Assembly: GCA_002269645.1 (NCBI GenBank)
Contig: NIVC01001456.1
Span: 186,001 to 250,000 of the forward strand
Direction: 5' to 3'
From: Macrostomum lignano
Taxonomy: Eukaryota
DNA length: 64,000 nucleotides
Positions 3,333-63,903 of this stretch are shown piece by piece. A program made the position numbers and the translations under genes. Each line of letters begins with the position of its first letter. The first letter of the stretch is position 1. The notes under the pieces are model-generated. The model ran no database searches. It was given only the letters and a program-made list of their open reading frames with translations, and was not told where the DNA came from.

Positions 3333-3798
<466 letters not shown>

Positions 3799-3834: not shown

Positions 3835-5190
3835 ATGCTCGATTTGCCAGACCGGGTCGCCATGTCCACCACGGCCTCCGCCCCGGTGTCGCTGATGACG
3901 CGCTACCCGCACCTGATGCAGCTGTACGGCAGGTTCATCCCGAACTTCCTCCTATTCGACCGGGTGGTGACCCCGCTGTGGTACATCCTCGGCTTGTTCG
4001 GCAACAGCCTCAGCGCGTACGTCTGGCTGAACCCGGAAGTTCGACGCAACAACTCCTCGGCGGTGTACCTGGCTGCCCTGTCGATCTGGGATCTGGTGTT
4101 CCTGGTGCTGCACACGTTTCAAGAGCTGCGCGAAGCGTGGAACATCGCCATGGAGAATGTGATCATGTGCATGGTGCTACCTGTAGTGCTGCTCACCGCC
4201 CAGTACCTGTCGCCGATCCTCGTGCTGGGCTTCACCGTGGAGCGCTGGATCTCGATTTGCTTTCCATTCAAGCGCGAGTCGCTGTGCAGCACCCGCCGCG
4301 CCTACACCGTCATCGGATTCATGACCGCCGGCGTGATCGTGTGGAACTTGGCCCAGCTCAACTTCAAGGAGTTCGAGCATGGCGCATGCGTGGTGCGCAG
4401 CGAAGGCTGGCTCTGGCTGGTGTACACCCTCACTACCGAGATTGTCATCAGCGGCCTCGTGCCCGTGACCGCTCTGGTCTTCAACCTGCTGGTGATTCAC
4501 GAGATGTACAAGATCGCAGTGAACCGGGGCAGCAACCGGCAGAACCAGTGCGAAGGCGGCCTCGGAGGCGGCAGCGGAGAGGACAGCGGCGGCGGCGAGG
4601 GCCGGTTCATGTCCAGCACGATCATGCTGCTCAGCGTGTCCTTCTTTGTCATCCTGACCTCTCTACCGGCCGGCCTGGTCTACGGCCTGCAGACCTTCGC
4701 CGGCTACGGCAGCCAGAACCTCACGGACGCTGAGGTGCTGCTGGACCCCGCCTGGAGGCGCCACTTCGCCATGGCGCGGGTGAAGAAAGTGATTGACGAG
4801 ATTTCCATCTCGCATTACTCGCTGAACTTTCTGATCTACCTGGCCACAGGGGCGCAGTACAGGCGGCAGGTAGCGCTGCTGTTCGCCAGGACCCGGGGTT
4901 CCGTCGTCGGCGGCTGCAGTGGCTGCGGCAGCGCCGCCGCCTCCTCCGCCGCGGCTGGGGCCGGATCCGCCAGCGGCGACGCGATGCTGAGAAACGACAA
5001 TGGGAAACGGCGGCGTACTGAGGATTTCTACCTGAGCAACAGCCGAACCAACAGGGCCACTCGGCGAGGCGGCGGCAGCAGCGGCAATGACGGAGGCGGG
5101 ACCTGCGCAGCAAATCGAGCGGTTGGAATGTCGGAGGGCGAGGAAAACGGGAAAGCCGTGGAAAAACCGCTTCTGGCTACTTATATTTAA
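3835..5190 (+). CDS. Intronless class A (rhodopsin-like) GPCR, FMRFamide/myosuppressin/sex-peptide-receptor-like peptide receptor group
   Basis: 451-aa ORF with seven hydrophobic segments: TM1 GLFGN, TM2 [11 protein letters not shown]3 [12 protein letters not shown] (DRY variant), TM5 GLVP, TM6 LTSLP, TM7 SLNFLIY (NPxxY variant). Cys in TM3 (MCMV) and ECL2 (GACV). Gly/Ala-rich ICL3 and C-tail. The start could be Met1 or a later Met. Confidence 0.92.
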
Positions 5191-7841: not shown

Positions 7842-7913
7842 GCGATTGTGGTGTAACGGTTAGCATGGATGCCTTCCAAGCATTCGACCCGGGTTCGACT
7901 CCCGGCAATCGCA
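7842..7913 (+). tRNA. tRNA-Gly, anticodon TCC
   Basis: 72 nt. Acceptor stem GCGATTG/CAATCGC plus discriminator A; D arm; anticodon stem GATGC/GCATT with loop CTTCCAA; T arm CCGGG-TTCGACT-CCCGG. No encoded CCA, as expected for a eukaryote. Confidence 0.96.
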
Positions 7914-22061: not shown

Positions 22062-25769
<3,708 letters not shown>

Positions 25770-26094: not shown

Positions 26095-27197
<1,103 letters not shown>

Positions 27198-29535
27198 ACG
27201 CTCCCAAATGCAGTGTCTGATGAGTGATGGAGGCAACTAACAGCAGCACGCTATGGTTCGTACTTTGTAGACCTATCCATGTGCCCTCGCCAATCACGCC
27301 ATGCATCTGATAGAGTAGCAGGCTCTTGGGAGCCGGGGTAGATGGCCTGTCATGAACTTCTGTGCTTGCGTGGGTTGTCCATCAAGCAGAACTACATGTA
27401 TAGGCAGGATGCGGTTAGTGTTATCAGCTCATCAGTCGGTCAGGAAGTATGGTGCATGCACATGGTGTATAGCTCAAGCTTCTCGCGATAAGCTGCCAGC
27501 GTCATGTACAAACGCTAGCATTATAATTTTCAGGCAAAATAGGCTGTGTAAAAAAAGTTATCCCCAGCAGCGAGCGCTTCGTCAACACTTCCGCTTGCCA
27601 AACCCAGAAAAAACTGAAATCCAAGAGCAAACTTCTCATTTGCTCCCAGTTTGCTAAGCGGAGAGAGAAGGCCAAGCAGGGAAGGGAAGGGAAGGCAAAG
27701 TAAATTCAAGTTATATAAATTTGAGCTGGAACTATATGTTGACCAAGTGAAACTTGAAGAAAGCTTACTGAATACAAAGGATCGTGTTTGCTCGTATTAG
27801 CTGGCTGGCTTAGAATTTTCTGCCTCGAAAATTGTTGAACTAACTAACGAGGCGACGAGCACAGTAAGGAAAAAGTTTTTTTGCGCGGTGTCTTTTTTGT
27901 AGCTAATAAGACCCCAGGATAGAGATCTACTCCAAGCCCTTAATTTCGACCCTTTCTTGCTTTGTACACTGAAGTTTGTTTGACGCTTCGGGGTAGGAGG
28001 ATCTTTGCAAGAGTACAGTACGTAGGAGTGAACCCCGAGGGGGTGGTTGGTCAGGAATGTACATTGATTTCAAAGGACCGATTGGTTAAACAGAGGGTTG
28101 TGCCGCGTGCGTACATTGCGGCCTTCCCCCCACTTAACACACAAGCCCCCGCTGTCTCAATATTTAAAATCTCGCCCGAATAGATATCAGCCACTGCTGT
28201 GCATGTCGCTCTCCAATTAAGTGTGTCCCAAATTAAAATTGTCTTTAAATATCTGCGATTTTGACAATTCTGTTTTTTTTACTCCCTCGCATAAAGTACA
28301 CGCACCCGAGATTGATTAGACCTGCCTTTTCTTAACACAGTCTCTCGGCCAGGCCTCAAGGCGAATCGCAGATTGCACAGAAAGCCTCAATCTTCAGCCT
28401 CAGTGAATCCCGTCCATCCATAATTTATTGTCTTCTCTCGTTTTTCTTACCCACTCCCCGTATACTAAGCCTGCGAGTGCCAGCTTCTCTGCTGCATCAG
28501 ATTAAACCCGTTTATTGCAGCCGGGATAGCGAATCCTCCTCCGCCCTCATAACACATAGCCATTTGTATATAATCTGAGATCAAAATCTGTCAAAGCCAG
28601 TGAGAAAGGAAGGAGAAAGAGAGGATATTCTCCCTCGGCAACGAGTCCAGTAAAAAAAGTGTAACTGCGGTTAAGGGTTAACTTGCTTCGGTTGGCCTTA
28701 CATCTTCTTATTCGAATACATCGTCTTCAGAAACCAGCAAACAAAGGGTAAGGCTGCGATGCTGTTATTAGCCAATTTTACATCATTGCACATACCTATA
28801 AGCACAGCAGGGGGACACCATGGCGCCTCAAAGCCCGACCAAATAAGTCCCACAGCTTACGCCCCTGCATCAAATGACGAAATGAGTTCAATTTTGGCTC
28901 CCAGCTTAAATCTTTTTAAGTTTCTTATATAACTGGCTTAGTAAGTATTGAAATTTTGCTAATCATTTTGGCCAGCTTATGCGTTAACATTATACCCTAG
29001 TAAATTAGTAATTAATGATCAATACCTTATATATGTATTCATGCATTTTTGGTTTTGTACCAAAAACTCGTAAATCCTGTCCTCCTGAAGCAGCAACTAT
29101 AGTCTTTTATCTGGCACAGGTTTTTCATTACTCGCGAGTTGTAACTCAGATAGGCTTCAAAATCCTTTCATATTGAGTCTTTATGGTTCTTACGAGCGTA
29201 ATTTGTAAATCTGAATTCTGCACGAGATTGTATTTTATCAGTTTTTTTCTAATTAGTTACCGTGCTCACAAGAAGAGCGAGGGGAGATTGGGTTTCTTCT
29301 GCATGGAGCAGTGCAGCGGTGTGCACAGTAAACCTTTTCTGCTAGCTTCACTAACTACAGTTATTAAAGTACACGGTTCTTACATTAGATTGTGCCAACT
29401 GCAACTTGGCTGGTTTCTTATCTGTAGGCGATTTAAGGCCAAGTTGTGATTATTAGTTTTAAGTAAGCATTAAAGCTGATTTATAACGCTGCCAAGTGCT
29501 TAAACTTTGCTCAAATCGGTGCTGGTATCAGTACT

Positions 29536-32427: not shown

Positions 32428-34795
32428 ATGGAGGCTGCGCCATCCATCGGGCTGCACTGCCCTCATCCGGAGCGGATTCGAACTCCGGACTCCGCATGCG
32501 AATCTGTCCGAGCTGCAGTGAACGCCATCATCGGCTCTGACGGTGGCACCGGCGGCGTCTCCGAAGCCGAGCGTCGGGCAATTCAGCTTGCCAACTTCTC
32601 CAACTGGGAGCACGAGGACGCCCGGCTGCTGGTGTACATGCGCCAGATGTACATCGATGTCGGCTTGGTGGAGCGACTGCCGATTGATGAGGACAAACTG
32701 CTGGCGTTCCTGCTCAAGATTTATGCTGGGTATAACCAGGTAAAGCTATGGGTTGAGATTTGTCAGGGTGAGATTCTAGGAATCTAATGATGAGATTTGT
32801 CAGAATGAGATTCTAGGAATCTAATGATGAGATTTGTCAGAATGAGATTCTAGGAATCTAATGATGAGATTTGTCAGGGTGAGATTCTAGGAATCTAATG
32901 ATGAGATTTGTCAGGGTGAGATTCTAGGAATCTAATGATGAGATTTGTCAGGGTGAGATTCTAGGAATCTAATGATGAGATTTGTCAGAATGAGATTCTA
33001 GGAATCTAATGATGAGATTTGTCAGAATGAGATTCTAGGAATCTAATGATGAGATTTGTCAGGGTGAGATTCTAGGAATCTAATGATGAGATTTGTCAGG
33101 GTGAGATTCTAGGAATCTAATGATGAGATTTGTCAGGGTGAGATTCTAGGAATCTAATGATGAGATTTGTCAGAATGAGATTCTAGGAATCTAATGATGA
33201 GATTTGTCAGAATGAGATTCTAGGAATCTAATGATGAGATTTGTCAGGGTGAGATTCTAGGAATCTAATGATGAGATTTGTCAGAATGAGATTCTAGGAA
33301 TCTAATGATGAGATTTGTCAGAATGAGATTCTAGGAATCTAATGATGAGATTTGTCAGGGTGAGATTCTAGGAATCTAGTGTTGCAATGTCAGGGTGAGA
33401 TTCTAGGAATCTAGTGTTGCGATGTCAGGGTGAGATTCTAGGCAAAATATACCAACAGCATTTCCACGCTAATCTCATTCCTTGTCCACAGGTTCCTTTC
33501 CACAATTTCCGTCACTGCTTCATGGTGACGCAGATGACCTACTCAATAATCTGGCTGGGCAATCTTCATGCAATCTGCTCAGACTCCGAGCTTGTCGCAC
33601 TGCTCACAGCCGCTGTCTGTCACGATCTGGACCATCCCGGCTTATCGAACTACTATCAGCGCTTGGCTGCCACCAAGATCGCATCGAGCTACTCGGCCTC
33701 CCCGTTGGAGAGCCATCACGCTGCCACGGCTCTGGCGGTGCTGTCGGACCCGGCTTGCGATATTCTGGCCAGCCTGACAGCAGAGACCCGCTCCGGAGTT
33801 GAGGGCGCAATCCAGAGGCTGATCCTGGCCACCGACATGGCGCATCACGCCGACATTTTGGCCGAGTTTGAGGCGGCCGTGGAGGCCGGACAGTTCAGCC
33901 GGCAGGATCTGAGCGACTGCTCTGCAGATAGTCGGGAACTCCTGCTGCGAATTGTGCTCAAAACTGCCGACGTTAGCAACGAGGCGAGGCCCGTGGCAAC
34001 CGCTGAGCGATGGATCGACTGCCTGCTGGCTGAGTTCTTTGCCGAGGCGCGGTTGGAACAGGAATCTGGTGAGGGAGCTTTGATGATGCGCATCGCGGGA
34101 AAACTCTTGCTGGACCAGTCTCCCAGATCCTCAGTTGCTGGGCCAGTCTCCCAGATCCTCAGTTGCTGGGCCAGTCTCCCAGATCCTCAGTTGCTGGGCC
34201 AGTCTCCCAAATCCTCAGTTGCTGGGCCAGTCTCCCAAATCCTCAGTTGCTGGGCCAGTCTCCCAAATCCTCAGTTGCTGGGCCAGTCTCCCAGATCCTC
34301 AGTTGCTGGGCTATCTCCCAGATCCCCAGTTGCTGGGCCACCAGCCTCCCAGATCCTCAGTTGCTGTGCCAGCCTCCCAGATCCTCAGTTGCTGTTCCAG
34401 CCTCCCAGATCCGGCAGTGTACCCCACTGTGCCTTGCACGTTGTCCCTTTGCACACAAGTTTTGGCAGATGCCAAAAACTCATTATCTCCTACTTTAATA
34501 AGTAGTGTACGCATACTCTCCTGCACCCTCGCAAGGCATCAGTCCCCTGCCGTTCATGAACCCGGCCTTGGTGCGCAAGGCGGTCAGTCAGCAGCAGTTC
34601 ATCGGCGGCATCGTCCTGCCGCTGTCCCGCGCCCTCGCCCGCGTGCTGCCGCGCACTGAGACGGACATTGTGCAGCCGGTGAAACGCCAGCTGGAGTTCT
34701 ACACTCGCCTGGTTGAGGATGAAGAACGGGAAGCTGCTGCGTCGCTGAGTAGGATTGACGCAGATGAGGATAATAGCGGCGCTGGTCAGGCATAG
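32428..34795 (+). CDS. Class I cyclic-nucleotide phosphodiesterase, PDE9-like (cGMP-type), 3 exons; 5' end uncertain
   Basis: Exons 32428-32739, 33492-34068, 34536-34795 (TAG), phase-consistent (last acceptor is AAG). Motifs PFHNFRHCF.VTQM, CHDLDHPG, LESHH, ILATDM, KTADVSNEARP, WIDCLL.EFF, PFM and SQQQFI closely parallel PDE9 (PFHNFRHCF, CHDLDHPG, LENHH, ATDM, CDISNEVRP, WVDCLLEEYF, AQIGFI). Confidence 0.9.
32750..33440. repeat. 37-bp minisatellite (gagatttgtcagggtgagattctaggaatctaatgat), about 18 copies, filling PDE intron 1
   Basis: Period 37 (32761 to 32798). Confidence 0.95.
34112..34410. repeat. 28-bp minisatellite (ccagtctcccagatcctcagttgctggg) in PDE intron 2
   Basis: Period 28 (34143 to 34171). 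Confidence 0.93.
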
Positions 34796-39750: not shown

Positions 39751-42700
39751 ATGTCTCGCTATCGCTACGCCAACGATCTGGATCTTGAGCCAGACGATAT
39801 TGATGATGATGACGAAGAATTCGTTCTAGAACATCGAGTTGGCCTGACAGCATCGGCTGCTACTGCCAGTGGCGGAGCTAATAGCGATGTTGGTCGCTAC
39901 CAGCTCACAGAAGAGGATGAAGAACAGCTGCTGGGCAGCGATGCGGAGTCTTGCGACGGAGCGGCTGCTCCGGCTGCAACTGCCCAGCTGATAGGCAGTC
40001 TTAATAACGTCGACAATGACAATAGTAATACTAATAATAATAATAATAATAGTAACCAAACTGAAAGCAGCGATAATAATAGTAATAATAATAATGATAA
40101 TAATAATGCCGACGGAGTCGATCTACACGACGAAGACGATCCCGACGCTATTGTTGTCGGCGTTGATATCGACGACGAAGATGTCGATGATCTGTTGCAA
40201 CTCTCCGCTGGCGAAGACGATATTGACGACGAAGCGCCTGCCGCCCCGCCTGCCGCTGCTCGGTCGCCCATTGCCGTCAAGCGGAAAGCATCCTCGCCGA
40301 TGCCGCCGCCGACTGCCCCGCCTCAGCCAGCGGCATCAGTCGCCAACGACAGCATCGGCAGCAGCTCCAAGGCTTCAATAATGAATTCACCCGAATTACT
40401 GACTAAAAACGGCATAGTAACCATCAAGCGTCCAGAATTGCCAAAGCCGCTTGCACACAGTCAGCAGTCGAGTTCGTCTGCCAGCGCTCAGCTACCAGTA
40501 GACGATGACTACGAGCGACGCTACGAAGAATTAAAAGAGAAGCAAGCTCGAATCCGGCGCATGATACAGAATAAGAAAGAGCAGAATAGACTGGCTCGGG
40601 TTGGAGCGGCTGCTCCTAAGCCTCAGCAGCCTCAGGCTCAGCCGCCGCAGGCGCCTCAGCAGCGGCAGAATCAGATTCGACCTTCAACTGGTCCCGCTGG
40701 TCCCCGCGCTGGAATAGCGGCCCGGGCGCCAATAGCCGCTGTTCCGACAAAGCCTTTGATGCAGCAGCAGCAGCAGAGGCCTGTGCGACCTCCATTTGTA
40801 CCGCCGCAGCAGCAGCGGCCGTTTGTTCAAAGAGCCGCTCCGGCCGCAACCAGTCTGCTGCAGCAGCATCGCGGCCAGCTGCCCCGACAGGCTCCAATCA
40901 ACTCGCTGTTTAACAATCACCAGCTCAGGCAGCCGATGCCCAACCAGCAGCAGCAACTGTTCATGCCGGCCTTCTCAATGTCATCGATTACATCATCGGT
41001 TGTCGCCAATGTTGTCGCTTCCGCCGTGTCAGCCGGCGTTGCTCACGGTCGTCGGTCTGTTCGCATCGCCAACTGTCCGCCTGGCACCGGGCCTAACGAT
41101 TTAAAAGTCTATACTGAGCTGGTGGGGCCTGTGCAGGTACGCATGGTTGAGTTCTTGTGCTGCTGTCTCTTGTTTTCTGTGCTTTAAAGTGTGCTGAGTA
41201 GTTAATGGGGTGGCTAAGAGCGTAGCTGAGTGTCTATTAATGTAGCTGAAGGGGTAGCTGAGTGTCTATAGATGTAGTTGAAGGGGTAGCTGAGTGTATA
41301 AATGGATGCTGAGTGTTGATTAAGGGTAGCTGAAGGGTTAGCTGACTGTACGAGTATAAATGGTTGCTGAGTGTCTTTAGATGTAGCTAAGTAGGATGTG
41401 GGAGGCTGAGTGTATAAATGATTGCTGAGTGTTGATAAAGGGTAGCTGCAGGGGTAGCTGAGTGTCTATAGATGTAGCTGCAGGGGTAGCTGAGTGTCTA
41501 TAGATGTAGCTTAAGGGATAGCTGAGTGTCTATAGATGTAGCTTAAGGGATAGCTGAGTGTCTATAGATGTAGCTGAAGGGGTAGCTGAGTGTCTATAGA
41601 TGTAGCTTAAGGGATAGCTGAGTGTCTATAGATGTAGCTTAAGGGATAGCTGAGTGTCTATAGATGTAGCTTAAGGGATAGCTGAGTGTCTATAGATGTA
41701 GCTGAAGGGGTAGCTGAGTGTCTATAGATGTAGCTGAAGGGGTAGCTGAGTGTCTGTAGATGTAGCTTAAGGGATAGTGAGTGTCTATAGATGTAGCTTA
41801 AGGGATAGCTGAGTGTCTATAGATGTAGCTTAAGGGGTAGCTGAGTGTCTATAGATGTAGCTGAAGGGGTAGCTGAGTGTCTATAGATGTAGCTGAAGGG
41901 GTAGCTGAGTGTCTATAGATGTAGCTGAAGGGGTAGCTGAGTGTCTATAGATGTAGCTGAAGGGGTAGCTGAGTGTCTATAGATGTAGCTGAAGGGGTAG
42001 CTGAGTGTCTATAGATGTAGTTGAAGGGGTAGCTGAGTGTATAAATGGTTGCTGAGTGTTGATTAAGGGTAGCTGAAGGGTTAGCTGACTGTACGAGTAT
42101 AAATGGTTGCTGAGTGTCTTTAGATGTAGCTAAGTAGGATGTGGGAGGCTGAGTGTATAAATGATTGCTGAGTGTTGATAAAGGGTAGCTGCAGGGGTAG
42201 CTGAGTGTCTATAGATGTAGCTGCAGGGGTAGCTGAGTGTCTATAGATGTAGCTTAAGGGATAGCTGAGTGTCTATAGATGTAGCTTAAGGGATAGCTGA
42301 GTGTCTATAGATGTAGCTGAAGGGGTAGCTGAGTGTCTATAGATGTAGCTTAAGGGATAGCTGAGTGTCTATAGATGTAGCTTAAGGGATAGCTGAGTGT
42401 CTATAGATGTAGCTTAAGGGATAGCTGAGTGTCTATAGATGTAGCTGAAGGGGTAGCTGAGTGTCTATAGATGTAGCTGAAGGGGTAGCTGAGTGTCTGT
42501 AGATGTAGCTTAAGGGATAGTGAGTGTCTATAGATGTAGCTTAAGGGATAGCTGAGTGTCTATAGATGTAGCTTAAGGGGTAGCTGAGTGTCTATAGATG
42601 TAGCTGAAGGGGTAGCTGAGTGTCTATAGATGTAGCTGAAGGGGTAGCTGAGTGTCTATAGATGTAGCTGAAGGGGTAGCTGAGTGTCTATAGATGTAGC

Positions 42701-44323
42701 TGAAGGGGTAGCTGAGTGTCTATAGATGTAGCTGAAGGGGTAGCTGAGTGTCTATAGATGTAGTTGAAGGGGTAGCTGAGTGTATAAATGGTTGCTGAGT
42801 GTTGATTAAGGGTAGCTGAAGGGTTAGCTGACTGTACGAGTATAAATGGTTGCTGAGTGTCTTTAGATGTAGCTAAGTAGGATGTGGGAGGCTGAGTGTA
42901 TAAATGATTGCTGAGTGTTGATAAAGGGTAGCTGCAGGGGTAGCCGAGTGTCTATAGATGTAGCTGAAGGGGTAGCTGAGTGTCTATAGATGTAGCTGCA
43001 GGGGTAGCTGAGTGTCTATAGATGTAGCTGAAGGGGTAGCTGAGTGTCTATAGCTGAGTGTTGGTAGCTGAGTGTCTATAGATGTAGCTGAAGGGGTAGT
43101 TGAGTGTCTATAGATGTAGCTTAAGGGATAGTGAGTGTCTATAGATGTAGCTTAAGGGATAGCTGAGTGTCTATAGATGTAGCTTAAGGGGTAGCTGAGT
43201 GTCTATAGATGTAGCTGAAGGGGTAGCTGAGTGTCTATAGATGTAGCTGAAGGGGTAGCTGAGTGTCTATAGATGTAGCTGAAGGGGTAGTTGAGTGTCT
43301 ATAGATGTAGTTGAAGGGGTAGCTGAGTGTATAAATGGTTGCTGAGTGTTGATTAAGGGTAGCTGAAGGGTTAGCTGACTGTACGAGTATAAATGGTTGC
43401 TGAGTGTCTTTAGATGTAGCTAAGTAGGATGTGGGAGGCTGAGTGTATAAATGATTGCTGAGTGTTGAGAAATGGTAGCTGCAGGGGTAGCTGAGTGTCT
43501 ATAGATGTAGCTGAAGGGGTAGCTGAGTGTCTATAGATGTAGCTGAAGGGGTAGCTGAGTGTCTATAGATGTAGCTGAATGGGTAGCTGAGTGTCTATAG
43601 ATGTAGCTGAAGGGGTAGCTGAGTGTCTATAGATGTAGCTGAAGAGGTAGCTGAGTGTCTATAGATGTAGCTGAAGGGGTAGCTGAGTGTCTATAGATGT
43701 AGCTGAAGAGGTAGCTGTGTCTATAGATGTAGCTTAAGGGGTAGCTGAGTGTCTATAGATGTAGCTGAAGAGGTAGCTGAGTGTCTATAGATGTAGCTGA
43801 AGGGGTAGCTGAGTGTCTATAGATGTAGCTGAAGGGGTTGCTGAGTGTCTATAGATGTAGCTGAAGGGGTTGCTGAGTGTCTATAGATGTAGCTGAAGGG
43901 GTAGCTGAGTGTCTATAGATGTAGCTGAAGGGGTTGCTGAGTGTCTATAGATGTAGCTGAAGGGGTTGCTGAGTGTCTATAGATGTAGCTGAAGGGGTAG
44001 CTGAGTCGGACTGTCTACCTCCGACTCAAGGGGTAGCTGAGGTGCGCGCCTGTACACCGGACTGAAACTGGGCCAGTTACTAACTAAGCTAAGCCTCCCA
44101 AACCCTCAGAACTGCCAAGTGTACCCCAACAATGGCCAGGCTTACATCACATTCTGCTATCCTGAGCATGCGCAAGAGTTTCTTCAGAGATTCAATCGGT
44201 AATTGATGAGAATATTTATATTTGTTCTCTCAAAGATTCCATTGTACTTACAAATTTCATTACTCCTTTGTTTCTTTCAGAGCGCATCTGAAAGGCTACC
44301 AACTGCAGCTGACCCTATGCTAA
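39751..44323 (+). CDS. RBM33: RBM33-like RNA-binding protein (acidic/Asn-rich N-terminus, coiled coil, Pro/Gln-rich region, C-terminal RRM), about 506 aa
   Basis: Exons 39751-41136, 44110-44198, 44281-44323 (TAA), phase-consistent. Spliced RRM VRIANCPPGTGPNDLKVYTELVGPVQ|NCQVYPNNGQAYITFCYPEHAQEFLQRFNR|AHLKGYQLQLTLC parallels the RBM33 terminal RRM as I recall it (VGPIQ...P.HA..F..KF.R); the domain order also matches. Orthology was not tested. Confidence 0.72.
41220..44040. repeat. 32-bp satellite (gctgagtgtctatagatgtagctgaaggggta) with a 743-bp higher-order period, filling intron 1 of the RBM33-like gene
   Basis: Monomer read directly; the diagnostic variant actgtacgagtataaat recurs at 41345, 42088, 42831 and 43378. 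Confidence 0.95.
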
Positions 44324-48520: not shown

Positions 48521-49472
48521 TGTTCTGTGCCTATCCGGCCAGTCGTCCATTCTAAGGTTTTATGTTCCTGTTATATGCATTGCTGATACATCATGCCAAG
48601 TTGTTATCTCGCACACGAATTAGCATCATTTTTTGGCCGTTTATTGACGGTGCTTGACATTCTGTCATTCAATGATCTCCGCTGTCTCGGGCATCATTGC
48701 TTTAGTAGCAATAAGCATTTGCTCAGCTGTTACTGTACTATTTTTGTTTAGGCAACAACAGCAAAGAATGCACAATATTCTTTGTAAATATCAGGTACAC
48801 AATCTTAAGCATTTCTAATTTTTGTACTGAAGCAATACATGAAATGCAAATAAATACACAGATACGAAATATTGAGGCTCAAACTTTGTTTTGATAAAAA
48901 TAACTCATATCGATTTTGAAAGCAAAACAAAAATCTTATGGCAGCTTTCTTCGCATTTCTTCCATCCTTTAAATAAGCTTCAACAGTTTGATGCGCTCAA
49001 ACTACTTACATGTACATGCATAAGTAGGCATGCGGAGTATGAGCTTAGTTAAGTAATTTACTATTAAAATCTGAACGATACAAGGAGCTTAAGCAGCCGA
49101 CTCCAGCAATATTGAGTATATTGGCAGCAATAAATTCATCAAAAAAACTTTTCGAATCGCCTGCCGTTATCTGCCTGCTCTCTGGTCACGTTTTCAAAGC
49201 AACAAAAAGCACAGTTGCTGCCCCCGTTAATTAAATCGAACTGTCAGCAGGTAGCACACAGGCCTGCAGAAGTTGGTATCTTTGAAGCCGCTTGCAGCAA
49301 ATATTGGCTCAGACATCTCTCGCATCGGTCCGTGCTCCAGCTGTTTGCGCTGAGACGCGGCTATTTAAGACAGCTCGCCATATTGCAAAGCTGCTCTGCA
49401 CCTGCCTTCAGCGCTTAGCCTTTGTGTCACAGTTGCATCGCTTCCAACCAACAGATTCGCTACAGCGCAGTT

Positions 49473-50648
49473 ATGAACCCGCTGACAATCTTGACCTTGA
49501 CGCTGGTGTCTCTGGGAGCCGCGGTCGTTGCCACTCCGATGCCGCCCGTTCAGTCGTCCATGACTGACGGGGCCAACAAGCTGCAACGGTGATTGACTGA
49601 AATTTTGTTTTCATGGACTACGGGTTATTGCGTTTCTTAGAATTCATTGACTACGGGGCATTGCGTTTCTTAGAATTCATTGACTACGGGGCATTGCGTT
49701 TCTTAGAATTCATTGACAGTGGGGTATTGCTTTTCTTAAAAAAAGAAAAAACTTAACTAATTCGTCTTTTCTAAAAATTGCTGCAAAAGTTACTATTTTA
49801 CGAGCTATTTCAACAAAATCAGTGTAGTATCCTTTGCTACATTAATAACAAAAGCACGTTTATAATAAAATGGCAATATTTAACATCCGCAGCAACAATG
49901 CCGCCTTGTATCGGAATCTTCTGCTGCGAACTCGCGACGCTTTGCACACAATCAACGTGGCCGATAAGTAATTTGCTAGCTTGAAATATCTGAAACATCT
50001 TGCATAAATATACGTAATTTAATGTGTGCCTAACTTAATCTATTGCAGAGATCTGCACAAACTGGCCAACCTACTGGTGCAGGCCCTGTCTCTGAAGCAG
50101 GGCATCAGGCGGCAGGTCACGGCTCTGCGGTAAGCATTTAATAGGCATCTGTGCATCGCTAAGAAGCTGGGTCCGTGTAGCTTGGCGGTCTAGCGGGTCG
50201 CTTGTTTGTTCGAAAGGTTGTGGGTTCGAATCCCATGAATCAAAATAAAAAAAATTCTAAAGATGCTTAATGTATAAACAAGCGGTCTAGCGTGTCTCCC
50301 TTCTATGCCGAAGGTCCTGGGTTCGATTTCAAACTCGCCAAATTTAATAAGAAGCATCATCGAGAAAGCCGCGGGGTTGCTAGCTCTTCTGTGACTAAGG
50401 TCCGGGCTTCGATTTCATTCTTTCAGTTAAACTTAGCGAAAAACTTCATTGGGAAAGTTTGGCTGTTCGGAAGGTCGCGGGTTCGATTTCCATATGGGAA
50501 AAATACAAAGAATCCCCAACCTACGCACGGCAGCAAGCGGGCCTGCGGTGTCCTGGACCTCGGCGGTCATTGCGACGCTGAGTATGGCGCCGAGCTGCTG
50601 GACCAGATCAACCACATGCTGAAGCCCGGCGGCCCGGGACGCCGGTGA
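49473..50648 (+). CDS. Calcitonin/DH31-type neuropeptide precursor (103 aa, 3 coding exons)
   Basis: Exons 49473-49588, 50049-50129, 50534-50648 (TGA), GT-AG, both introns phase 2. Product MNPLTILTLTLVSLGAAVVA-TPMPPVQSSMTDGANKLQRDLHKLANLLVQALSLKQGIRRQVTALRKR-ACGVLDLGGHCDAEYGAELLDQINHMLKPGGP-GRR: signal peptide, basic cleavage site, two Cys, and C-terminal Pro-Gly-Arg-Arg amidation signal. Confidence 0.85.
49615..49735. repeat. 33-bp tandem repeat (cattgactacggggcattgcgtttcttagaatt), 3-4 copies, in neuropeptide intron 1
   Basis: Direct reading. Confidence 0.88.
50171..50495 (+). mobile_element. Four head-to-tail degenerate tRNA-derived (SINE-like) units in neuropeptide intron 2
   Basis: A-box TAGCTTGGCGG (50178); B-box-like GGTTCGAATCC (50223), GGTTCGATTTC (50320), GCTTCGATTTC (~50406) and GGTTCGATTTCC (~50480), each preceded by AAGGT. 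Confidence 0.6.
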
Positions 50649-51305
50649 AGTTAAAGTTGAAGCGATGATGCAAATAAAATCGGTTGCAAAATACTTTGAC
50701 CTTCAAGATCAATGAATCATAGAAGTTTGAGCGAATAAAAATTTTAACTAAATAAGCGAACTTCGTAGCATTGAAGCATATACCGACCGATATATTTTCC
50801 TTTCTTTGCTACAAAACAATAATTTTTCGATATTGCTACTTGGCAGTAAAGAAGTCCGCATATTACGAGCGTATTTTCACAGTTTTCGCCAGAATCCAGA
50901 AGCTGGGATTTCAACAGGCTCAGTCAGACAGCCGCGGCCAAGTGGTTAATTTTCAGATATCGGCCAATCTGACGGCATGAGTGGAGCCATGAATAGTCGA
51001 TGAAGACGCGCTGGCTGGAAGCGAGGCGTTGCACCGCAGCATCAGGCGAATCTCTCCATCACTTGAGAACTCATTTCTCTTATCTGCTGTTTGATGATGG
51101 GCAGAGAAGCTGGGCGGCTGAGAACTTTCATGCAGTCAATTTTGGACGACTAAAACTATCCAGCATTCTGCTCTGCGGATCACCCTGACACCAATAAAAT
51201 GCTGAGATTGGCTCTCCATCGGGAACTGCTGAGCTCGGAGCTCAGATTTGTGCCATGCTGCATCTGCAGCTGATGGAGCTGGGCTGCTGTGGGCTCTGGG
51301 GTTGG

Positions 51306-52380
<1,075 letters not shown>

Positions 52381-53739: not shown

Positions 53740-56700
53740 ATGGCATCATTTCAACAGCTTCTGCTGCTCCTAGCAGCAGCAACAGCAACAGCTGCAGCAA
53801 TGGTCGCATCGCCGACACCGTCGGATGTCGTCCTAGACGAGGAGCTGCCACCGGGCAGCCAGCCCGCCGAACTGCGTCAGGCGTTGATTCAGCGCGGCCT
53901 GGACAGCCCCGGATGCTGCGTCATGATCCCGCCTCATCCGTACTTCGAGTACACCGCCAACGAGGCCGCGGCCCGCGCCGAGCTGACGGTCAAGAAGCGC
54001 CTGGACCGCGAGTCCATGTGCCCCGACGCCGGCCTCTGCTGCAGCTCGGCCGAGCTGATCTGCCAGCTCAAGCTGCACTTCCTTGACCGTCGGCAGTCGG
54101 GCGCACCCCGGGAGATCGTCCTGACCGTCGGGCTTCGCGACATCAACGATCACCGGCCTGTCTTCCCAGAGGCCGAGCGCCGGATTCAGGTCAGCGAGGA
54201 CGCCCCGCCGGGTCAGCTGGTCCGCCTGCCGCTGGCTTCCGATCCGGACTCCGACTCCAACTCGGTCAGGGACTACTCGCTGCTGCCGAGGGTCGGTGTC
54301 TTCGGCCTGCGCGAGGACCGGGCCGGCTCTGGCAGGGTGACCCATCTGTCACTCGAGCTGCTGGACAGGCTGGACAGGGAGGCCCAGCCGGTGCACAATC
54401 TGACCCTGGTGAGAGCCACTGCATCACCCACTCCATCACCCACTGCATCACACACTGCATCACCCACTCCATCACCCACTGCATCACACACTGCATCACC
54501 CACTCCATCACCCACTGCATCACACACTGCATCACCCACTCCATCACTCACTCCATCATCCACCCCACCACTCCATCACCCACTCCATCACCCACTCCAG
54601 CACCCACTCCATCACCCACTTCATCACCCACCCCATCACCTACCCCACCACACGCTCTATATCCCCAGGTTGCCACAGACATCGACGGCCAAAACGCCAG
54701 CCTCCGCCTCATCGTGAACGTCACGGACGTGAACGACAACCGGCCGCAGTTCCACCCAACCGGCCACCGGACTGTCCGAGTTCGCGAGTCCGACCCGGCC
54801 GGCAACTGTCCGGTCCAGCTGTCGGCCACCGATCCGGACAGTGGCGAGAATGGCCGAGTAATCTTCGAGCTGGACCCGCACCAGCCGGACCTGGCCGCGG
54901 TCGATGCCAACTTTCGCGTGTCGCCATCGAGCGGCTTCATCTGCCATCGTCGGAGTCTGGACTACGAGACTAAGGAGATCTTCGAGCTGTCCGTCATCGC
55001 CAGGAATCCCACGCCGATCAGAGGCGACCCTGGAGCTGGCGGAGCTGGCAGCCGGCTGGCGACGGCCACCGTGACGGTGCTGGTTGTTGATGAGAATGAT
55101 GAGGCGCCCCAGCTGCAGCTGGACTATCTGGATGGGACAGCGGAGGTGTGAACTGGATTTGGGGTCTTCGGTAATCTAAAAAGTCCACAATGAATAAACT
55201 GTTACCAATCAGTCGCCAATCAGTCACCAATCAATCACCAATCAGTCACCAATCAGTCACCAATCAGTCACCAATCAACCACCAATCACCAATCAGTCAC
55301 CAATCAGTCACCAATCAGTCACCAATTAATCACCAATCAGTCACCAATCAACCACCAATCACCAATAAGTCACCAATCAGTCACCAATAAGTCACCAATC
55401 AGTCACCAATAAGTCACCAATCAGTCACCAATCAGTTACCAATAACTAATCAGTCACCAATCAGTCACCAATCGATCACCAATAACCAATCAGTCACCAA
55501 CAAATCAACCCAGGTAACGGAGAACGACCGCCGAGGCCACACCTTGGCGGCCCTGCAGGCCACGGACAGGGACCGGGGCGACAACGGCCGGGTGAGCTGC
55601 CAGATCGACCAGCCCGACCTGCGCGACGTCTTCGAGCTTCTGCCCACCGCCGGCTCAGCATCCGCCGGCGCTTCATCCGGTCAGCCGCAGCGCTGGCGAT
55701 TCTACCTGGGCACCAGGGACGGAGGTCCCGGACTCGATCGCGAGGCCCACCTGAAACTCGGACCGATGGCGGCTCACCGAGAAGTCGTCCGACTCAACGT
55801 CGGCATCGTCTGTCGCGACGGCGGCCAACCGGCCAATGTCCGGTTCGCCAACGCCTCCGTGCTCATCGGTGACGTCAACGACAATGCGCCAGCGCTGCGG
55901 CTGGTCCGGTCTGCCGCTGCCGCTACAGCAGGCGGCGGCGACAAAGACCTCTTAGCTTCGGCCAGCGTGCCCGAGAACCGTCCGCCCGGCTTCCACGTCG
56001 CCAAGCTCGACGCTCACGACCTCGACTTCGGCGTCAACGGCTCAGTGGCGTTCGCGCTCGATCCGGCTGGCACCGACACTTTGGCGCTGGACGCCTTCGA
56101 CGTTCGAAGCGACGGCTTGTTGGTCACCCGACGGACGCTCGATCGAGAGTCGGCGATGCCGCCCATAGACAGCTTCCGGGTAGCCGTGATGGCGCACGAC
56201 CGGGGCAGCGCCGTCCGGCTCAGCTCCGCCCTGACGCTCCACGTCCGCCTGATCGACGAGAACGACAACGCGCCGGTCATCCTGCCGCTGGCCAGATCTG
56301 CGGCGGCGGCCGCCGGCGCCGGGCTGGAGTTCCGCCTGGCGGAGAACAACAAAGCCGGTGCCGCTGTCGGCCGCCTGCGCGTCGTGGACGCCGACTTCGG
56401 ACCGGACGAAGCCGACTGGCGACGGCGTCGGCGTCGGGTCTCGCTGTCACCGGCGGCGACTTCGAGTTCGACGCCTGGCGGCGGCGCTCGACTGCCGTTT
56501 CGAGTGCGGCCGTCGACAGGCCCGGACCCGGACGAGTTCATCATCGAAGCCACGGACGTGCTGGACGCGGAGCGCCAGGCCGAGTACCGCTTCCTGCTGC
56601 TGGCCAGCGACGGTCAGCACTCCTCCAGCTGCAATGTCACTGTCATCGTCGAGGACGTCAACGACCACCCGCCGAAGATCTTCTATCCTTGCAGCGGCAG

Positions 56701-57454
56701 CGGCGGCAATCGGAACTCGAGCTCCGTCCGCCAGTTGCTGAGGAACCACAGCGTCTCCTGGCGCGAGCCGGTGGGCTACACGGTGCTGAAGGTCAACGCC
56801 AACGACGAAGACTTCGACAAGACTGGGAACGGCAGGTTCCAGTTCAGTCTGCGGGAGGCCCCGGCTGCCGGACAGTCTGGTGACGCCGTCCGGCCACTGT
56901 TCAGTGTCGATCCCGACGGTGGGCAGATCCGGGTGGCCGCTCGCATGACCGGCCGAGACCGCGGCGTCCGGCGCCTGACGGTAACAGCGACCGACCGAGG
57001 ACAGCCGCGGCCGCTGGCCACCGAGTGCGTCTTCGACGTGACGGTGGACAGCTCGGAGCCGAGAAGCCAAGCAGCCTTGGCGCCGCGTCTCGGCGAAGAT
57101 GGAGGAGGAAGAGACGGTGGCGGCGTGTTCACCCAGGTGCCGCCGATGCCACGCCAGAAGCAGCAGTTCGGAGACTCTGTCGTGCTGGCCGTTGTTGGCA
57201 TTTTCGCGCTGCTGTTGCTATTGGCAACGGTGCTGCTGCTGCTGTACGCCAGGCATTGGCACGCGGCGCCGGGCTTCCTGCCAGACGTGCTGGGCGCCTG
57301 CTTCGGCAGGAGGGAGCAGCGGAGCCAGGCGGGCCGTGGCGGCGGCGGTGGCCGCGGCCTCAAGTCCGCTGAATCTGCCGAGGCTGCTGGAGCGGCCTTT
57401 CTCGGGGTCAAGTCGGGTCAGCCGGATCAGCTGAGATCCAGGCCGCTCAGTCAG
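53740..57454 (+). CDS. Protocadherin with 7 extracellular cadherin repeats (delta-1-like architecture), signal peptide and TM; cytoplasmic exons beyond 57454 unresolved
   Basis: Exons 53740-54408, 54669-55145, 55514-57454, all phase 0. Signal peptide MASFQQLLLLLAAA; protocadherin-type EC1 LDRESMC..C; Ca-binding linkers DINDHRP, DVNDNRP, DENDEAP, DVNDNAP, DENDNAP, DVNDHPP; LDRE/LDYE motifs; TM VVLAVVGIFALLLLLATVLLLLY; donor CAG|GTTAGT at 57454. Confidence 0.92.
54416..54650. repeat. 12-bp-based repeat (ccactgcatcac/ccactccatcac) filling protocadherin intron 1
   Basis: Direct reading. Confidence 0.9.
55205..55505. repeat. 11-12-bp repeat (caccaatcagt) filling protocadherin intron 2
   Basis: Direct reading. 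Confidence 0.9.
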
Positions 57455-57464
57455 GTTAGTTGGG

Positions 57465-57491
57465 TAGTTAGTTACTTAGTTAGTCAGTTAC

Positions 57492-57526
<35 letters not shown>

Positions 57527-61630: not shown

Positions 61631-62356
61631 CTCTTCCTATCTTTAAAATTCAACTCCTCATTAATCTGCCTGATTACACGTAGCCAGATGCACATTGCTT
61701 ACTAAGCAAGTTGCTCCGACACACTGAGCTCTTCTAACCTGCTCTGCCGGCCGTTTCCCAATTCGATCGAAATTGCATTCAAATCCCAAATTCTCCTGTC
61801 AGACAAAAGACACACAGGCGCTTTTAAAACATTGCTCCAACTGCAGAGTGGGATTATTATCCCATCAACAAATCGGACAAGTCCAATGCACAGTCAGGCT
61901 TCTAAGAGGTGGGAAGAGGATCCTAATGAATAATTCAAGAGCAGCACCTAGCGAGGAAACTCCATGATGTCTAACAAATGCTACTGCCTAATACCTGACA
62001 CCTCCAGTCGTGGGAGGGAAGAGTTTCCTCACACCTTTACTGGGGATAACAGGGGATTCCCTCCTACAGTGTTTGAGCTTTATTATTCCCATTGTACCCT
62101 GCCGGCGTGGAGTACAAAGGATGGTGAGGAGCGGCGGCGAGATTGAGCTGAGACACAGGCATGGAGGAGACAATGGGGAAGCGGGCGGGAACAGTTTTGA
62201 TGAGGCTTGCAGTTTCCAGTCAATTTATTCAAGAGGCTCAGTTCTAGCAAACACAATACTGAAACTGAACAAGGGAGTTGGCAATTATTTGTCACGGAAC
62301 TGGCAGCTCAGCAGTCTGCGCTTCTTGGCAATTTCCTGTAAACTGGCCCTGAGTAG

Positions 62357-63855
62357 AGGAATAGAATGGATTGCTAATCTAGCCAGCATCACTGATGAAG
62401 GAATAGAATGGATTGCTAATCTAGCCAGCATCACTGATGAAGGAATAGAATGGATTGTTAATCTAGCCAGCATCACTGATGAAGGAATAGAATGGATTGC
62501 TAATCTAGCCAGCATCACTGATGAAGGAATAGAATGGATTGTTAATCTAGCCAGCATCACTGATGAAGGAATAGAATGGATTGCTAATCTAGCCAGCATC
62601 ACTGATGAAGGAATAGAATGGATTGTTAATCTAGCCAGCATCACTGATGAAGGAATAGAATGGATTGCTAATCTAGCCAGCATCACTGATGAAGGAATAG
62701 AATGGATTGTTAATCTAGCCAGCATCACTGATGAAGGAATAGAATGGATTGCTAATCTAGCCAGCATCACTGATGAAGGAATAGAATGGATTGCTAATCT
62801 AGCCAGCATCACTGATGAAGGAATAGAATGGATTGCTAATCTAGCCAGCATCACTGATGAAGGAATAGAATGGATTGCTAATTTAGCCAACATCACTGAT
62901 GAAGGAATAGAATGGATTGCTAATCTAGCCAGCATCACTGATGAAGAAATAGAATGGATTGCTAATCTAGCCAACATCACTGATGAAGGAATAGAATGGA
63001 TTGCTAATCTAGCCAACATCACTGATGAAGGAATAGTATGGATTGCTAATCTAGCCAGCATCACTGATGAAGGAACAGAATGGATTGCTAATCTAGCCAG
63101 CATCACTGATGAAGGAATAGAATGGATTGCTAATTTAGCCAACATCACTGATGAAGGAATAGAATGGATTGCTAATCTAGCCAGCATCACTGATGAAGGA
63201 ATAGAATGGATTGCTAATCTAGCCAGCATCACTGATGAAGGAATAGAATGGATTGTTAATCTAGCCAGCATCACTGATGAAGGAATAGAATGGATTGCTA
63301 ATCTAGCCAGCATCACTGATGAAGGAATAGAATGGATTGCTAATTTAGCCAACATCACTGATGAAGGAATAGAATGGATTGCTAATCTAGCCAGCATCAC
63401 TGATGAAGGAATAGAATGGATTGCTAATCTATCCAGCATCACTGATGAAGGAATAGAATGGATTGCTAATCTAGCCAACATCACTGATGAAGGAATAGAA
63501 TGGATTGCTAATCTAGCCAGCATCACTGATGAAGGAATAGTATGGATTGCTAATCTAGCCAGCATCACTGATGAAGGAATAGAATGGATTGCTAATCTAG
63601 CCAGCATCACTGATGAAGGAATAGAATGGATTGCTAATCTAGCCAACATCACTGATGAAGGAATAGAATGGATTGCTAATCTAGCCGGCATCACTGATGA
63701 AGGAATAGAATGGATTGCTAATTTAGCCAACATCACTGATGAAGGAATAGATTGGATTGCTAATCTAGCCAGCATCACTGATGAAGGAATAGATTGGATT
63801 GCTAATCTAGCCAACATCACCGATGAAGGAATAGAATGGATTGCTAATCTAGCAG
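62357..63855. repeat. 42-bp minisatellite (gaaggaatagaatggattgctaatctagccagcatcactgat), about 35 copies
   Basis: 14-aa periodicity in ORFs 62010-63902 (+) and 62285-63991 (-). Confidence 0.96.
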
Positions 63856-63903
63856 ATATTCCCCCCCCCAAACCGACTTCCAGGCCCCACGAAGATACCT
63901 GAT

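What the first reader, a model, noticed from the sequence alone, without database searches (positions are those of the whole stretch)
49473..50648. Hidden three-exon calcitonin/DH31-type neuropeptide precursor with a hybrid mature peptide
Seen: three small phase-2-linked exons, not recovered intact by the ORF track, splice into a 103-aa prepropeptide with a signal peptide, a Leu-rich pro-segment, RKR, a 32-residue peptide (coded at 50541-50636) ACGVLDLGGHCDAEYGAELLDQINHMLKPGGP, and GRR-stop. Known: calcitonin-type peptides have an N-terminal disulfide ring and a C-terminal Pro-amide (vertebrate calcitonin is 32 aa); DH31 peptides lack Cys, and insect examples carry an N-terminal (L/V)D(L/F)G motif and end in GGP-amide. 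Inference: this peptide carries both signatures (C-x8-C ring enclosing LDLG, plus GGP-amide), so it may inform the calcitonin/DH31 split in Spiralia and may be an uncharacterised flatworm hormone acting on a class B receptor. I cannot tell whether it has already been annotated.
Basis: partly seen in the sequence, partly recalled or inferred. Interest (0 to 1): 0.85.

Follow-up and report, generated by a model that had tools for sequence, protein, structure and literature searches.

The report
Flatworm calcitonin-type neuropeptide precursor gene

Summary
The three exons, their GT..AG borders, the reading frame and the 32-residue peptide (50541-50636) are all in the sequence.

The window is Macrostomum lignano contig NIVC01001456.1. 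The gene is already in GenBank as "hypothetical protein BOX15_Mlig031819g1/g3" (128 aa). That annotation was built from an RNA-seq-guided transcriptome assembly.

The annotated model has four coding exons. The mature peptide is unaffected.

The "hybrid calcitonin/DH31" reading is not supported:
- A profile built from nemertean, brachiopod and phoronid calcitonins scores the peptide at 32.7 bits, and 0 of 5000 constrained shuffles reach that score.
- A DH31 profile gives 7.6 bits, no more than it gives other calcitonins.
- The ring motif xLDLGGHC is typical of lophotrochozoan calcitonins (CxxNLGGHCATE; some have RLDLGGHCATE).
- A brachiopod calcitonin also ends in GGP-Gly.

A M. lignano paralogue conserves the KR site, both Cys, LDLGGHCDA, GAELLDQI and PGGPG plus basic residues, while its propeptide is unrelated.

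Calcitonin has been reported in a polyclad flatworm. I found no report for Macrostomum.

Verdict: a new, unnamed member of a known family, of modest interest.

The parts
49263..49472 (+). Transcribed 5' leader (5' UTR), at least this far upstream
   Evidence: The transcript-derived ORF calls P0126 and P0121, from sister copies, extend N-terminally through this stretch. The window's translation matches them except for 2 residues and one in-frame stop (FSA*PLC).
49473..49588 (+). Coding exon 1: start codon, signal peptide (MNPLTILTLTLVSLGAAVVA) and the start of the propeptide; ends in phase 2
   Evidence: Kyte-Doolittle mean is about 2.1 over residues 6-21. UniProt names the protein 'Conserved secreted protein'.
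49589..49892 (+). Intron 1 (gt..ag), containing a 33-bp minisatellite at 49610-49738
   Evidence: The minisatellite is about 660 bp longer in copy L003.
49893..49967 (+).
   Evidence: Needed to reproduce PAA50059.1 / PAA67779.1 exactly. Identical in all three genomic copies.
49968..50048 (+). Intron 2 (gtaatt..tgcag)
50049..50129 (+). Coding exon 3: DLHKLANLLVQALSLKQGIRRQVTAL plus the first two bases of the Arg codon of RKR
   Evidence: Aligns with the RKRxALxxLKxLL propeptide motif of nemertean and phoronid calcitonin precursors.
50130..50533 (+). Intron 3 (gtaag..gcag), containing four degenerate tRNA-3'-half-like modules (50185-50491)
   Evidence: No Rfam tRNA match.
50534..50648 (+). Coding exon 4: completes RKR, then the mature peptide, Gly-Arg-Arg and TGA
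50541..50636 (+). Predicted mature peptide ACGVLDLGGHCDAEYGAELLDQINHMLKPGGP. Predicted Cys2-Cys11 disulfide and C-terminal Pro-amide; calculated monoisotopic mass 3289.53 Da.
   Evidence: Scores 32.7 bits against the lophotrochozoan calcitonin profile. 24 of 32 residues are identical to the paralogue P0122.
50673..50678 (+). AATAAA polyadenylation signal, starting 25 nt after the stop codon

Best explanation
This is the Macrostomum lignano calcitonin-type neuropeptide gene. It is one of three near-identical genomic copies (Mlig031819 g1-g3), and a diverged paralogue also exists.

Shown:
- A four-exon mRNA encodes a 128-aa prepropeptide.
- It consists of a signal peptide, a long helical Leu/Arg-rich propeptide, an R-K-R site, a 32-residue peptide, then Gly-Arg-Arg-stop.

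Inferred from what is established for this family:
- The signal peptide is removed.
- A prohormone convertase cuts after RKR.
- Carboxypeptidase removes RR, and peptidylglycine alpha-amidating monooxygenase converts Gly to a C-terminal Pro-amide.
- Cys2 and Cys11 form the N-terminal ring.
- The amidated, disulfide-bonded peptide is released from neurons or endocrine cells.
- It activates a class B1 calcitonin-receptor-like GPCR and raises cAMP, as shown for oyster calcitonins.

By sequence it belongs with the second ('CT2', xNLGGHC-type) calcitonin of nemerteans, brachiopods, phoronids and annelids. It does not belong with DH31.
For: Organism and locus:
- A PDE9 exon in the window is 99% identical to a M. 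lignano protein.
- The window is 100% identical to NIVC01001456.1.

Gene model:
- The four-exon splice equals PAA50059.1 / PAA67779.1 exactly.
- That GenBank annotation derives solely from an RNA-seq-guided transcriptome assembly (StringTie/TACO/TransDecoder; PMC5730564). The spliced transcript is therefore RNA-supported.

Constraint:
- In the 93%-identical copy L003, the CDS has 1 synonymous difference in 387 nt.
- The introns have 17 differences in 789 nt and the flanks 12 in 600 nt.

Paralogue:
- P0122 (UniProt A0A1I8FBD4) conserves KR, both Cys, LDLGGHCDA, GAELLDQI and PGGPG plus basic residues.
- 24 of 32 mature residues are identical, while the propeptide is unrelated.

Family assignment:
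- A profile of 9 lophotrochozoan calcitonins, built without this peptide, scores it at 32.7 bits.
- None of 5000 full shuffles, and none of 5000 shuffles that keep KR, both Cys and PGRR fixed, reach that score.
- The DH31 profile scores it at 7.6 bits.
- It aligns end to end with Cerebratulus and Urechis calcitonin with a single 1-residue gap.
- A profile search retrieves 'calcitonin-1 [Urechis unicinctus]' and relatives, some with RLDLGGHCATE.

Architecture:
- It has the same precursor layout as ecdysozoan calcitonin-A and spiralian calcitonins (PMC4237046; PMC8557429).
- The AlphaFold model has a non-helical ring segment, then a helix at residues 106-120, then a non-helical C-terminus (low confidence).
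Against: - No peptide, expression or receptor data exist for this gene.
- I could not inspect RNA-seq junction reads myself.
- Its score against the calcitonin profile (32.7 bits) is below the leave-one-out scores of the profile's own members (40-86 bits). It overlaps the range of the other calcitonin subtypes (7-39 bits), so assignment to the CT2 subtype rather than to calcitonin in general is soft.
- It lacks the (W/Y)HYLNSxxSP tail typical of spiralian calcitonins (KPGGP instead), and its ring is one residue longer.
- Single-sequence searches found no orthologue outside M. lignano.
- Pfam has no hit. Bona fide protostome calcitonins also have none.
Confidence: 0.85

Rival explanations
1. 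One reading: a genuine calcitonin/DH31 hybrid that informs the split of the two families, or an intermediate between them.
For: The peptide contains LDLG, as insect DH31 begins GLDLG, and it ends in GGP-amide like arthropod DH31.
Against: - The DH31 profile score of 7.6 bits is the same as for ordinary calcitonins (6-15) and far below DH31 members (33-67). 254 of 5000 constrained shuffles reach it.
- Global alignment to DH31 needs three gaps and scores 6, against 44-49 for calcitonins.
- xLDLGGHC/xNLGGHC is the standard spiralian calcitonin ring.
- Hemithiris calcitonin also ends in GGPG.
Confidence: 0.05
2. The three-exon, 103-aa product is the main or a regulated isoform, with exon 2 (49893-49967) a cassette exon.
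For: Skipping the 75-nt exon, which starts and ends in phase 2, preserves the frame. Calcitonin genes are alternatively spliced in insects and deuterostomes (PMC4237046, PMC12638048).
Against: All three annotated copies, and the UniProt model from an earlier assembly, include exon 2. Exon 2 is identical in all copies and helps form the conserved propeptide helix. No model without it was found.
Confidence: 0.1
3. A lineage-specific secreted peptide that only converges on the calcitonin layout, for example a gland, adhesive or defensive product, and does not signal through a calcitonin-type receptor.
For: No orthologue was found outside M. lignano by single-sequence search. The C-terminal half is divergent. 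The peptide is acidic (net charge about -4).
Against: The profile score is specific: 0 of 5000 shuffles reach it even with KR, Cys and PGRR held fixed. The peptide is the same length as spiralian calcitonins apart from one extra ring residue and aligns with them end to end with that single 1-residue gap. The propeptide motif is shared with nemertean and phoronid precursors.
Confidence: 0.06

Closest known systems
Lophotrochozoan calcitonin, the xNLGGHC type, e.g. Lineus/Cerebratulus NCLVNLGGHCATETAAAIADMYHYLNSAESP-amide, Phoronis HCLNLGGHCSIEG..., Urechis 'calcitonin-1' (PMC8557429 supplement)
   Same: - Same order of parts: signal peptide, helical RKRxALxxLKxLL-like propeptide, KR, ring, helix, P-G-basic.
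- Ring motif L-(N/D)-L-G-G-H-C.
- Glu three residues after the ring.
- The same 21-residue distance from the second Cys to the amidated Pro.
   Different: - The ring is one residue longer (C-x8-C versus C-x6/7-C).
- The tail is INHMLKPGGP instead of (W/Y)HYLNSxxSP.
- The precursor carries one calcitonin only, with no upstream CT1-type peptide.
- It scores below family members in leave-one-out tests (32.7 versus 40-86 bits).
Ecdysozoan calcitonin-A (Zootermopsis, Ixodes, Priapulus, Peripatopsis, C. elegans; Veenstra 2014, PMC4237046)
   Same: - Single-copy peptide at the C-terminus of a roughly 110-130-aa precursor.
- Leu-rich helical propeptide ending in KR.
- Ring of 8-9 residues followed by Asp.
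- Pro-Gly followed by several Arg. Locusta calcitonin-A has the same C-x8-C spacing and 31 residues from Cys to Pro.
   Different: The ring sequence is xINAGLSHxC rather than LDLGGHC. The profile score is only 3-7 bits.
DH31 (calcitonin-like diuretic hormone)
   Same: The N-terminal (L/V)D(L/F)G-like motif, the length of about 31 residues, and the C-terminal Pro-amide (GGP-amide in arthropods).
   Different: DH31 has no Cys pair. This peptide has the two ring Cys and scores 7.6 bits on a DH31 profile, against 33-67 for members.
Calcitonin proneuropeptide of the polyclad flatworm Prostheceraeus crozieri (Piovani et al. 2023, PMC10396302)
   Same: A flatworm calcitonin-type precursor, expressed in larval neurons.
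   Different: It comes from a different order (Polycladida versus Macrostomorpha).

Membership tests
Calcitonin-type neuropeptide precursor (protostome, disulfide-bearing) | N-terminal signal peptide | tested here: met
   Hydrophobic core LTILTLTLVSLGAAVV with Kyte-Doolittle mean about 2.1, and small residues at -3/-1 (V-V-A|T). UniProt names it 'Conserved secreted protein'. This is heuristic; SignalP was not available.
Calcitonin-type neuropeptide precursor (protostome, disulfide-bearing) | Dibasic convertase site directly upstream of the peptide | tested here: met
   R-K-R precedes A-C in the window gene; K-R precedes Y-C in the paralogue.
Calcitonin-type neuropeptide precursor (protostome, disulfide-bearing) | Two Cys near the N-terminus able to form a ring (6-9 residues apart in protostomes) | tested here: met
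   C-x8-C, conserved in the paralogue. The range in known members is x6 to x9. The disulfide itself cannot be tested here.
Calcitonin-type neuropeptide precursor (protostome, disulfide-bearing) | C-terminal Pro followed by Gly and basic residues (Pro-amide) | tested here: met
   P-G-R-R-stop in the window gene; P-G-K-R-R-K-R in the paralogue.
Calcitonin-type neuropeptide precursor (protostome, disulfide-bearing) | Significant sequence similarity to family members | tested here: met
   32.7 bits on a profile of 9 lophotrochozoan calcitonins and 25.0 bits on a profile of all protostome calcitonins; 0 of 5000 shuffles reach either score. The profile search retrieves a named calcitonin.
Calcitonin-type neuropeptide precursor (protostome, disulfide-bearing) | Helix following the ring | tested here: inconclusive
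   The AlphaFold single-sequence model has a helix at residues 106-120 after a non-helical ring, but pLDDT is only about 54-60.
Calcitonin-type neuropeptide precursor (protostome, disulfide-bearing) | Match to Pfam Calc_CGRP_IAPP | tested here: not met
   No hit. This is not diagnostic: Urechis calcitonin-1, the mass-spectrometry-supported Lineus calcitonin and Zootermopsis calcitonin-A also give no hit. The model is built on vertebrate peptides.
Calcitonin-type neuropeptide precursor (protostome, disulfide-bearing) | Ligand of a class B1 calcitonin-receptor-like GPCR | not testable with these tools
   Needs receptor cloning and cAMP assays. Shown for oyster calcitonins (Schwartz 2019, cited in PMC8557429 and PMC12638048).
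DH31 (calcitonin-like diuretic hormone) | No Cys pair or N-terminal ring | tested here: not met
   Two Cys are present and conserved in the paralogue.
DH31 (calcitonin-like diuretic hormone) | Sequence similarity to DH31 members | tested here: not met
   7.6 bits, against 33-67 for members in leave-one-out tests and 6-15 for ordinary calcitonins.

The most novel reading that the evidence does not exclude
Macrostomids may have kept only this calcitonin lineage: two paralogues, both with a DH31-like GGP-amide tail. If so, these peptides could serve both the calcitonin-type and the DH31-type class B receptors, making them functionally dual ligands even though they are not sequence hybrids. This would bear on the open question of how ligand-receptor pairing between the two protostome receptor clusters evolved.
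Probability: 0.1. Interest if true: 0.5.

Novelty: new member of a known kind. Interest (0 to 1): 0.3.

Why it matters
It gives a name and a predicted mature peptide to an unnamed "hypothetical / conserved secreted" protein in a genetically tractable flatworm model.

It adds Macrostomorpha to the flatworm lineages that retain calcitonin. [quoted passage not shown] In the literature I could search, only a polyclad flatworm was reported to express calcitonin.

M. lignano has transgenesis and RNAi, so calcitonin function in a flatworm could be tested directly. It does not change the current picture of calcitonin/DH31 evolution.

Tried and rejected
- **Word-indexed protein search with the 103-aa product:** no hits. 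The exhaustive phmmer search was needed to find the annotated protein and the paralogue.
- **Two further phmmer hits (P0123, P0124):** these are giant plakin-repeat proteins matching only 'VTAKQLLDCGVLD'. Rejected as chance hits amplified by repeats.
- **Pfam:** no meaningful hit for the 103-aa or the 128-aa product. It is uninformative for protostome calcitonins in general.
- **Exact look-up of the neighbouring GPCR ORF, to identify the organism:** not on record. The PDE9 exon gave the organism instead.
- **Exact look-up of the paralogue P0122:** no DNA on record, so its gene structure could not be examined.
- **Supplement of Piovani 2023:** no calcitonin sequence held.
- **Full-text string search for LDLGGHC, GAELLDQI and NLGGHCATE:** nothing found.
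- **Cardoso 2020:** no flatworm data.
- **Rfam on the intron's tRNA-like repeats:** no tRNA match.
- **Further calcitonin-like exons in the window, by six-frame regex:** none.
- **Comparison of the three genomic copies:** they are too similar (98% and 93%) for more than a weak selection signal.

Full report
**1. What is in the sequence**

- The ATG is at 49473.
- The exons are 49473-49588, 50049-50129 and 50534-50648, each flanked by gt/ag.
- All junctions are in phase 2, giving a 312-nt ORF and a 103-aa protein.
- The protein ends ...RKR-ACGVLDLGGHCDAEYGAELLDQINHMLKPGGP-GRR-stop.
- The 32-mer is coded at 50541-50636.

An AATAAA signal starts 25 nt after the stop, at 50673. A regular expression for a calcitonin-like layout (C-x5-10-C-x14-28-PG-basic) matches only this site in all six frames of the 64-kb window.

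**2. Organism and locus**

The window is animal DNA. It carries a rhodopsin-type GPCR ORF, a PDE catalytic exon and cadherin exons, and it is packed with minisatellites. The PDE9 exon is 99% identical to a Macrostomum lignano protein. The window is 100% identical over 7176 bp to GenBank contig NIVC01001456.1 of assembly GCA_002269645.1 (Mlig_3_7).

**3. The gene is already annotated, with four coding exons**

A word-indexed search found nothing. An exhaustive phmmer search of 1.84 billion representatives found two real relatives.

The first relative is a cluster comprising:
- PAA50059.1 / PAA67779.1, "hypothetical protein BOX15_Mlig031819g1/g3", 128 aa;
- PAA59768.1 (g2), a 186-aa 5'-partial model;
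- UniProt A0A1I8GFH5, "Conserved secreted protein".

The exon has a cag acceptor and a gtaatt donor and keeps phase 2. The four-exon splice of the window translates to the GenBank protein exactly.

The GenBank annotation of this assembly was produced only from an RNA-seq-guided transcriptome assembly (StringTie/TACO, TBONE, TransDecoder; PMC5730564). The N-terminal extensions of the 186- and 198-aa models are translations of the 5' leader. In the window copy that frame contains a stop.

Skipping exon 2 stays in frame, so a minor 103-aa isoform is possible. No model lacks the exon.

**4. Copies and constraint**

The assembly holds three copies.
- L002 is the window itself.
- L001 is 98% identical.
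- L003 is 93% identical and has the 33-bp intron-1 minisatellite expanded by about 660 bp.

This fits the known redundancy of the DV1 assembly. Against L003, the CDS has 1 synonymous change in 387 nt. The introns have 17 changes in 789 nt and the flanks 12 in 600 nt. This is a weak signal of purifying selection that includes exon 2.

**5. A paralogue conserves exactly the peptide**

The second phmmer hit, UniProt A0A1I8FBD4 (M. lignano, uncharacterised), has its own signal peptide and an unrelated propeptide. It then reads ...KR-YCGFLDLGGHCDAMHGAELLDQILHLSRPGGP-GKRRKR. Of the 32 mature residues, 24 are identical. The KR site, both Cys, LDLGGHCDA, GAELLDQI and PGGPG plus basic residues are all kept. 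Conservation confined to the peptide and its processing sites is the expected signature of a bioactive peptide.

**6. Which family**

Published protostome calcitonins supplied the comparison sets.
- Ecdysozoan calcitonin-A precursors came from Veenstra 2014 (PMC4237046). They have the same layout: signal peptide, Leu-rich helix, KR, a ring of 8-9 residues followed by Asp, then ...SPG-RRRR.
- Nemertean, brachiopod and phoronid calcitonins and DH31s came from Thiel et al. 2021 (PMC8557429). The Lineus peptide NCLVNLGGHCATETAA... has mass-spectrometric support.

I built profiles from these sets without the M. lignano peptides.

| Profile | Score of this peptide | Shuffle control | Comparison values |
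|---|---|---|---|
| xNLGGHC-type spiralian calcitonin | 32.7 bits (paralogue 28.7) | 0 of 5000 free shuffles; 0 of 5000 shuffles with KR, both Cys and PGRR fixed (maximum 23.1) | Members 40-86 bits in leave-one-out tests; other calcitonin subtypes 7-39 bits |
| DH31 | 7.6 bits | 254 of 5000 constrained shuffles reach it | Ordinary calcitonins 6-15 bits; true DH31 members 33-67 bits |

With one single-residue gap the peptide aligns end to end with Cerebratulus and Urechis calcitonin (score 44-49). Alignment to DH31 needs three gaps and scores 6.

A profile search of the 5.8-billion-protein set returned "calcitonin-1 [Urechis unicinctus]" and many unnamed relatives. Several of them carry RLDLGGHCATE, the same LDLGGHC heptad.

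The propeptide (...INVADKDLHKLANLL...) aligns with the RKRxALxxLKxLL motif upstream of nemertean and phoronid calcitonins, across the exon 2/3 junction.

A single-sequence AlphaFold model is of low confidence. It shows a non-helical ring, a helix at residues 106-120 and a non-helical C-terminus.

Pfam gives no hit. It also gives none for bona fide protostome calcitonins.

**7. The "hybrid" idea**

- LDLG inside the ring is the family norm.
- GGP-Gly also ends the Hemithiris calcitonin.
- Lophotrochozoan DH31s end in YGP, NSP, ASP or SGP, so GGP is not a DH31 signature outside arthropods.

The peptide is a somewhat divergent calcitonin. Its ring is one residue longer, and its tail is KPGGP instead of NSxxSP. 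It is not an intermediate between the two families.

**8. How it most likely works**

Shown: the gene structure, the precursor layout, the family similarity and the paralogue conservation.

Inferred from established neuropeptide processing and from oyster receptor work (cited):
- signal-peptide removal;
- convertase cleavage after RKR;
- trimming of RR;
- amidation of Pro from the Gly donor;
- a Cys2-Cys11 disulfide;
- secretion, then activation of a class B1 calcitonin-receptor-like GPCR coupled to cAMP.

The calculated mass of the mature form is 3289.53 Da.

**9. Novelty**

Calcitonin has been reported in larval neurons of a polyclad flatworm (PMC10396302). A 2026 review states that many planarians and parasitic flatworms have lost such bilaterian-conserved peptides (PMC13551398). 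I found no paper naming a Macrostomum calcitonin, and the database names are uninformative. This is a new, unnamed member of a known family. It is useful for annotation and for functional work in a transgenic flatworm model, but it does not change the evolutionary picture.

Noticed in passing
window 50185-50491 (intron 3 of the gene): Four degenerate direct-repeat modules, spaced 74-97 nt, each ending in a tRNA T-arm/B-box-like GGGTTCGA(A/T)T(C/T)C. They look like tandem tRNA-3'-half or SINE-like fragments. There is no Rfam tRNA match.
   Followed up: partly
window 49610-49738 (intron 1); L003 about 3140-3740: A 33-bp minisatellite with 3.9 copies in the window copy. It is about 660 bp longer in the 93%-identical gene copy on NIVC01002232.1.
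   Followed up: partly
window 49263-49472: The 5' leader is open in frame with the ATG in the g2 copy, which is why GenBank and UniProt list 186- and 198-aa 'partial' proteins. The window copy has an in-frame stop there (FSA*PLC).
   Followed up: yes
window 3835-5190 (+): An intronless 451-aa ORF with a rhodopsin-family 7TM domain (7tm_1, E = 1.4e-13), a possible peptide or amine GPCR. Its exact product is not on record in the contig index. It is flanked by AGAC and 33-bp repeats.
   Followed up: no
window 33414-34505 (+): A large exon of a PDE9-type cGMP phosphodiesterase, 99% identical to M. lignano A0A1I8GGX6. A second M. lignano PDE9 paralogue is 56% identical.
   Followed up: partly
window 53740-57499 (+): Cadherin-repeat exons (Pfam Cadherin, E = 1e-32) immediately downstream of the calcitonin gene.
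   Followed up: no
window 7842-7913 (+): An intact tRNA-Gly(TCC) gene (ARAGORN; Rfam 65.7 bits).
   Followed up: yes
whole window, e.g. 3-2482, 22305-23519, 26101-27198, 41442-44006, 51306-52376, 62357-63853: An unusually dense set of micro- and minisatellite arrays (51 TRF rows with score at least 400; overlapping rows with different periods describe the same array). Many of the longest 'ORFs' in the six-frame list are repeat artefacts. For example, 62010-63902 gave spurious Pfam hits with no valid domain stretch.
   Followed up: partly
P0122 (UniProt A0A1I8FBD4), not in the window: The paralogue model continues for about 160 Arg/Ala/Ser-rich residues after PGGPGKRRKR. This could be a real C-terminal extension or a read-through artefact of an older assembly. 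No DNA was available to check.
   Followed up: no
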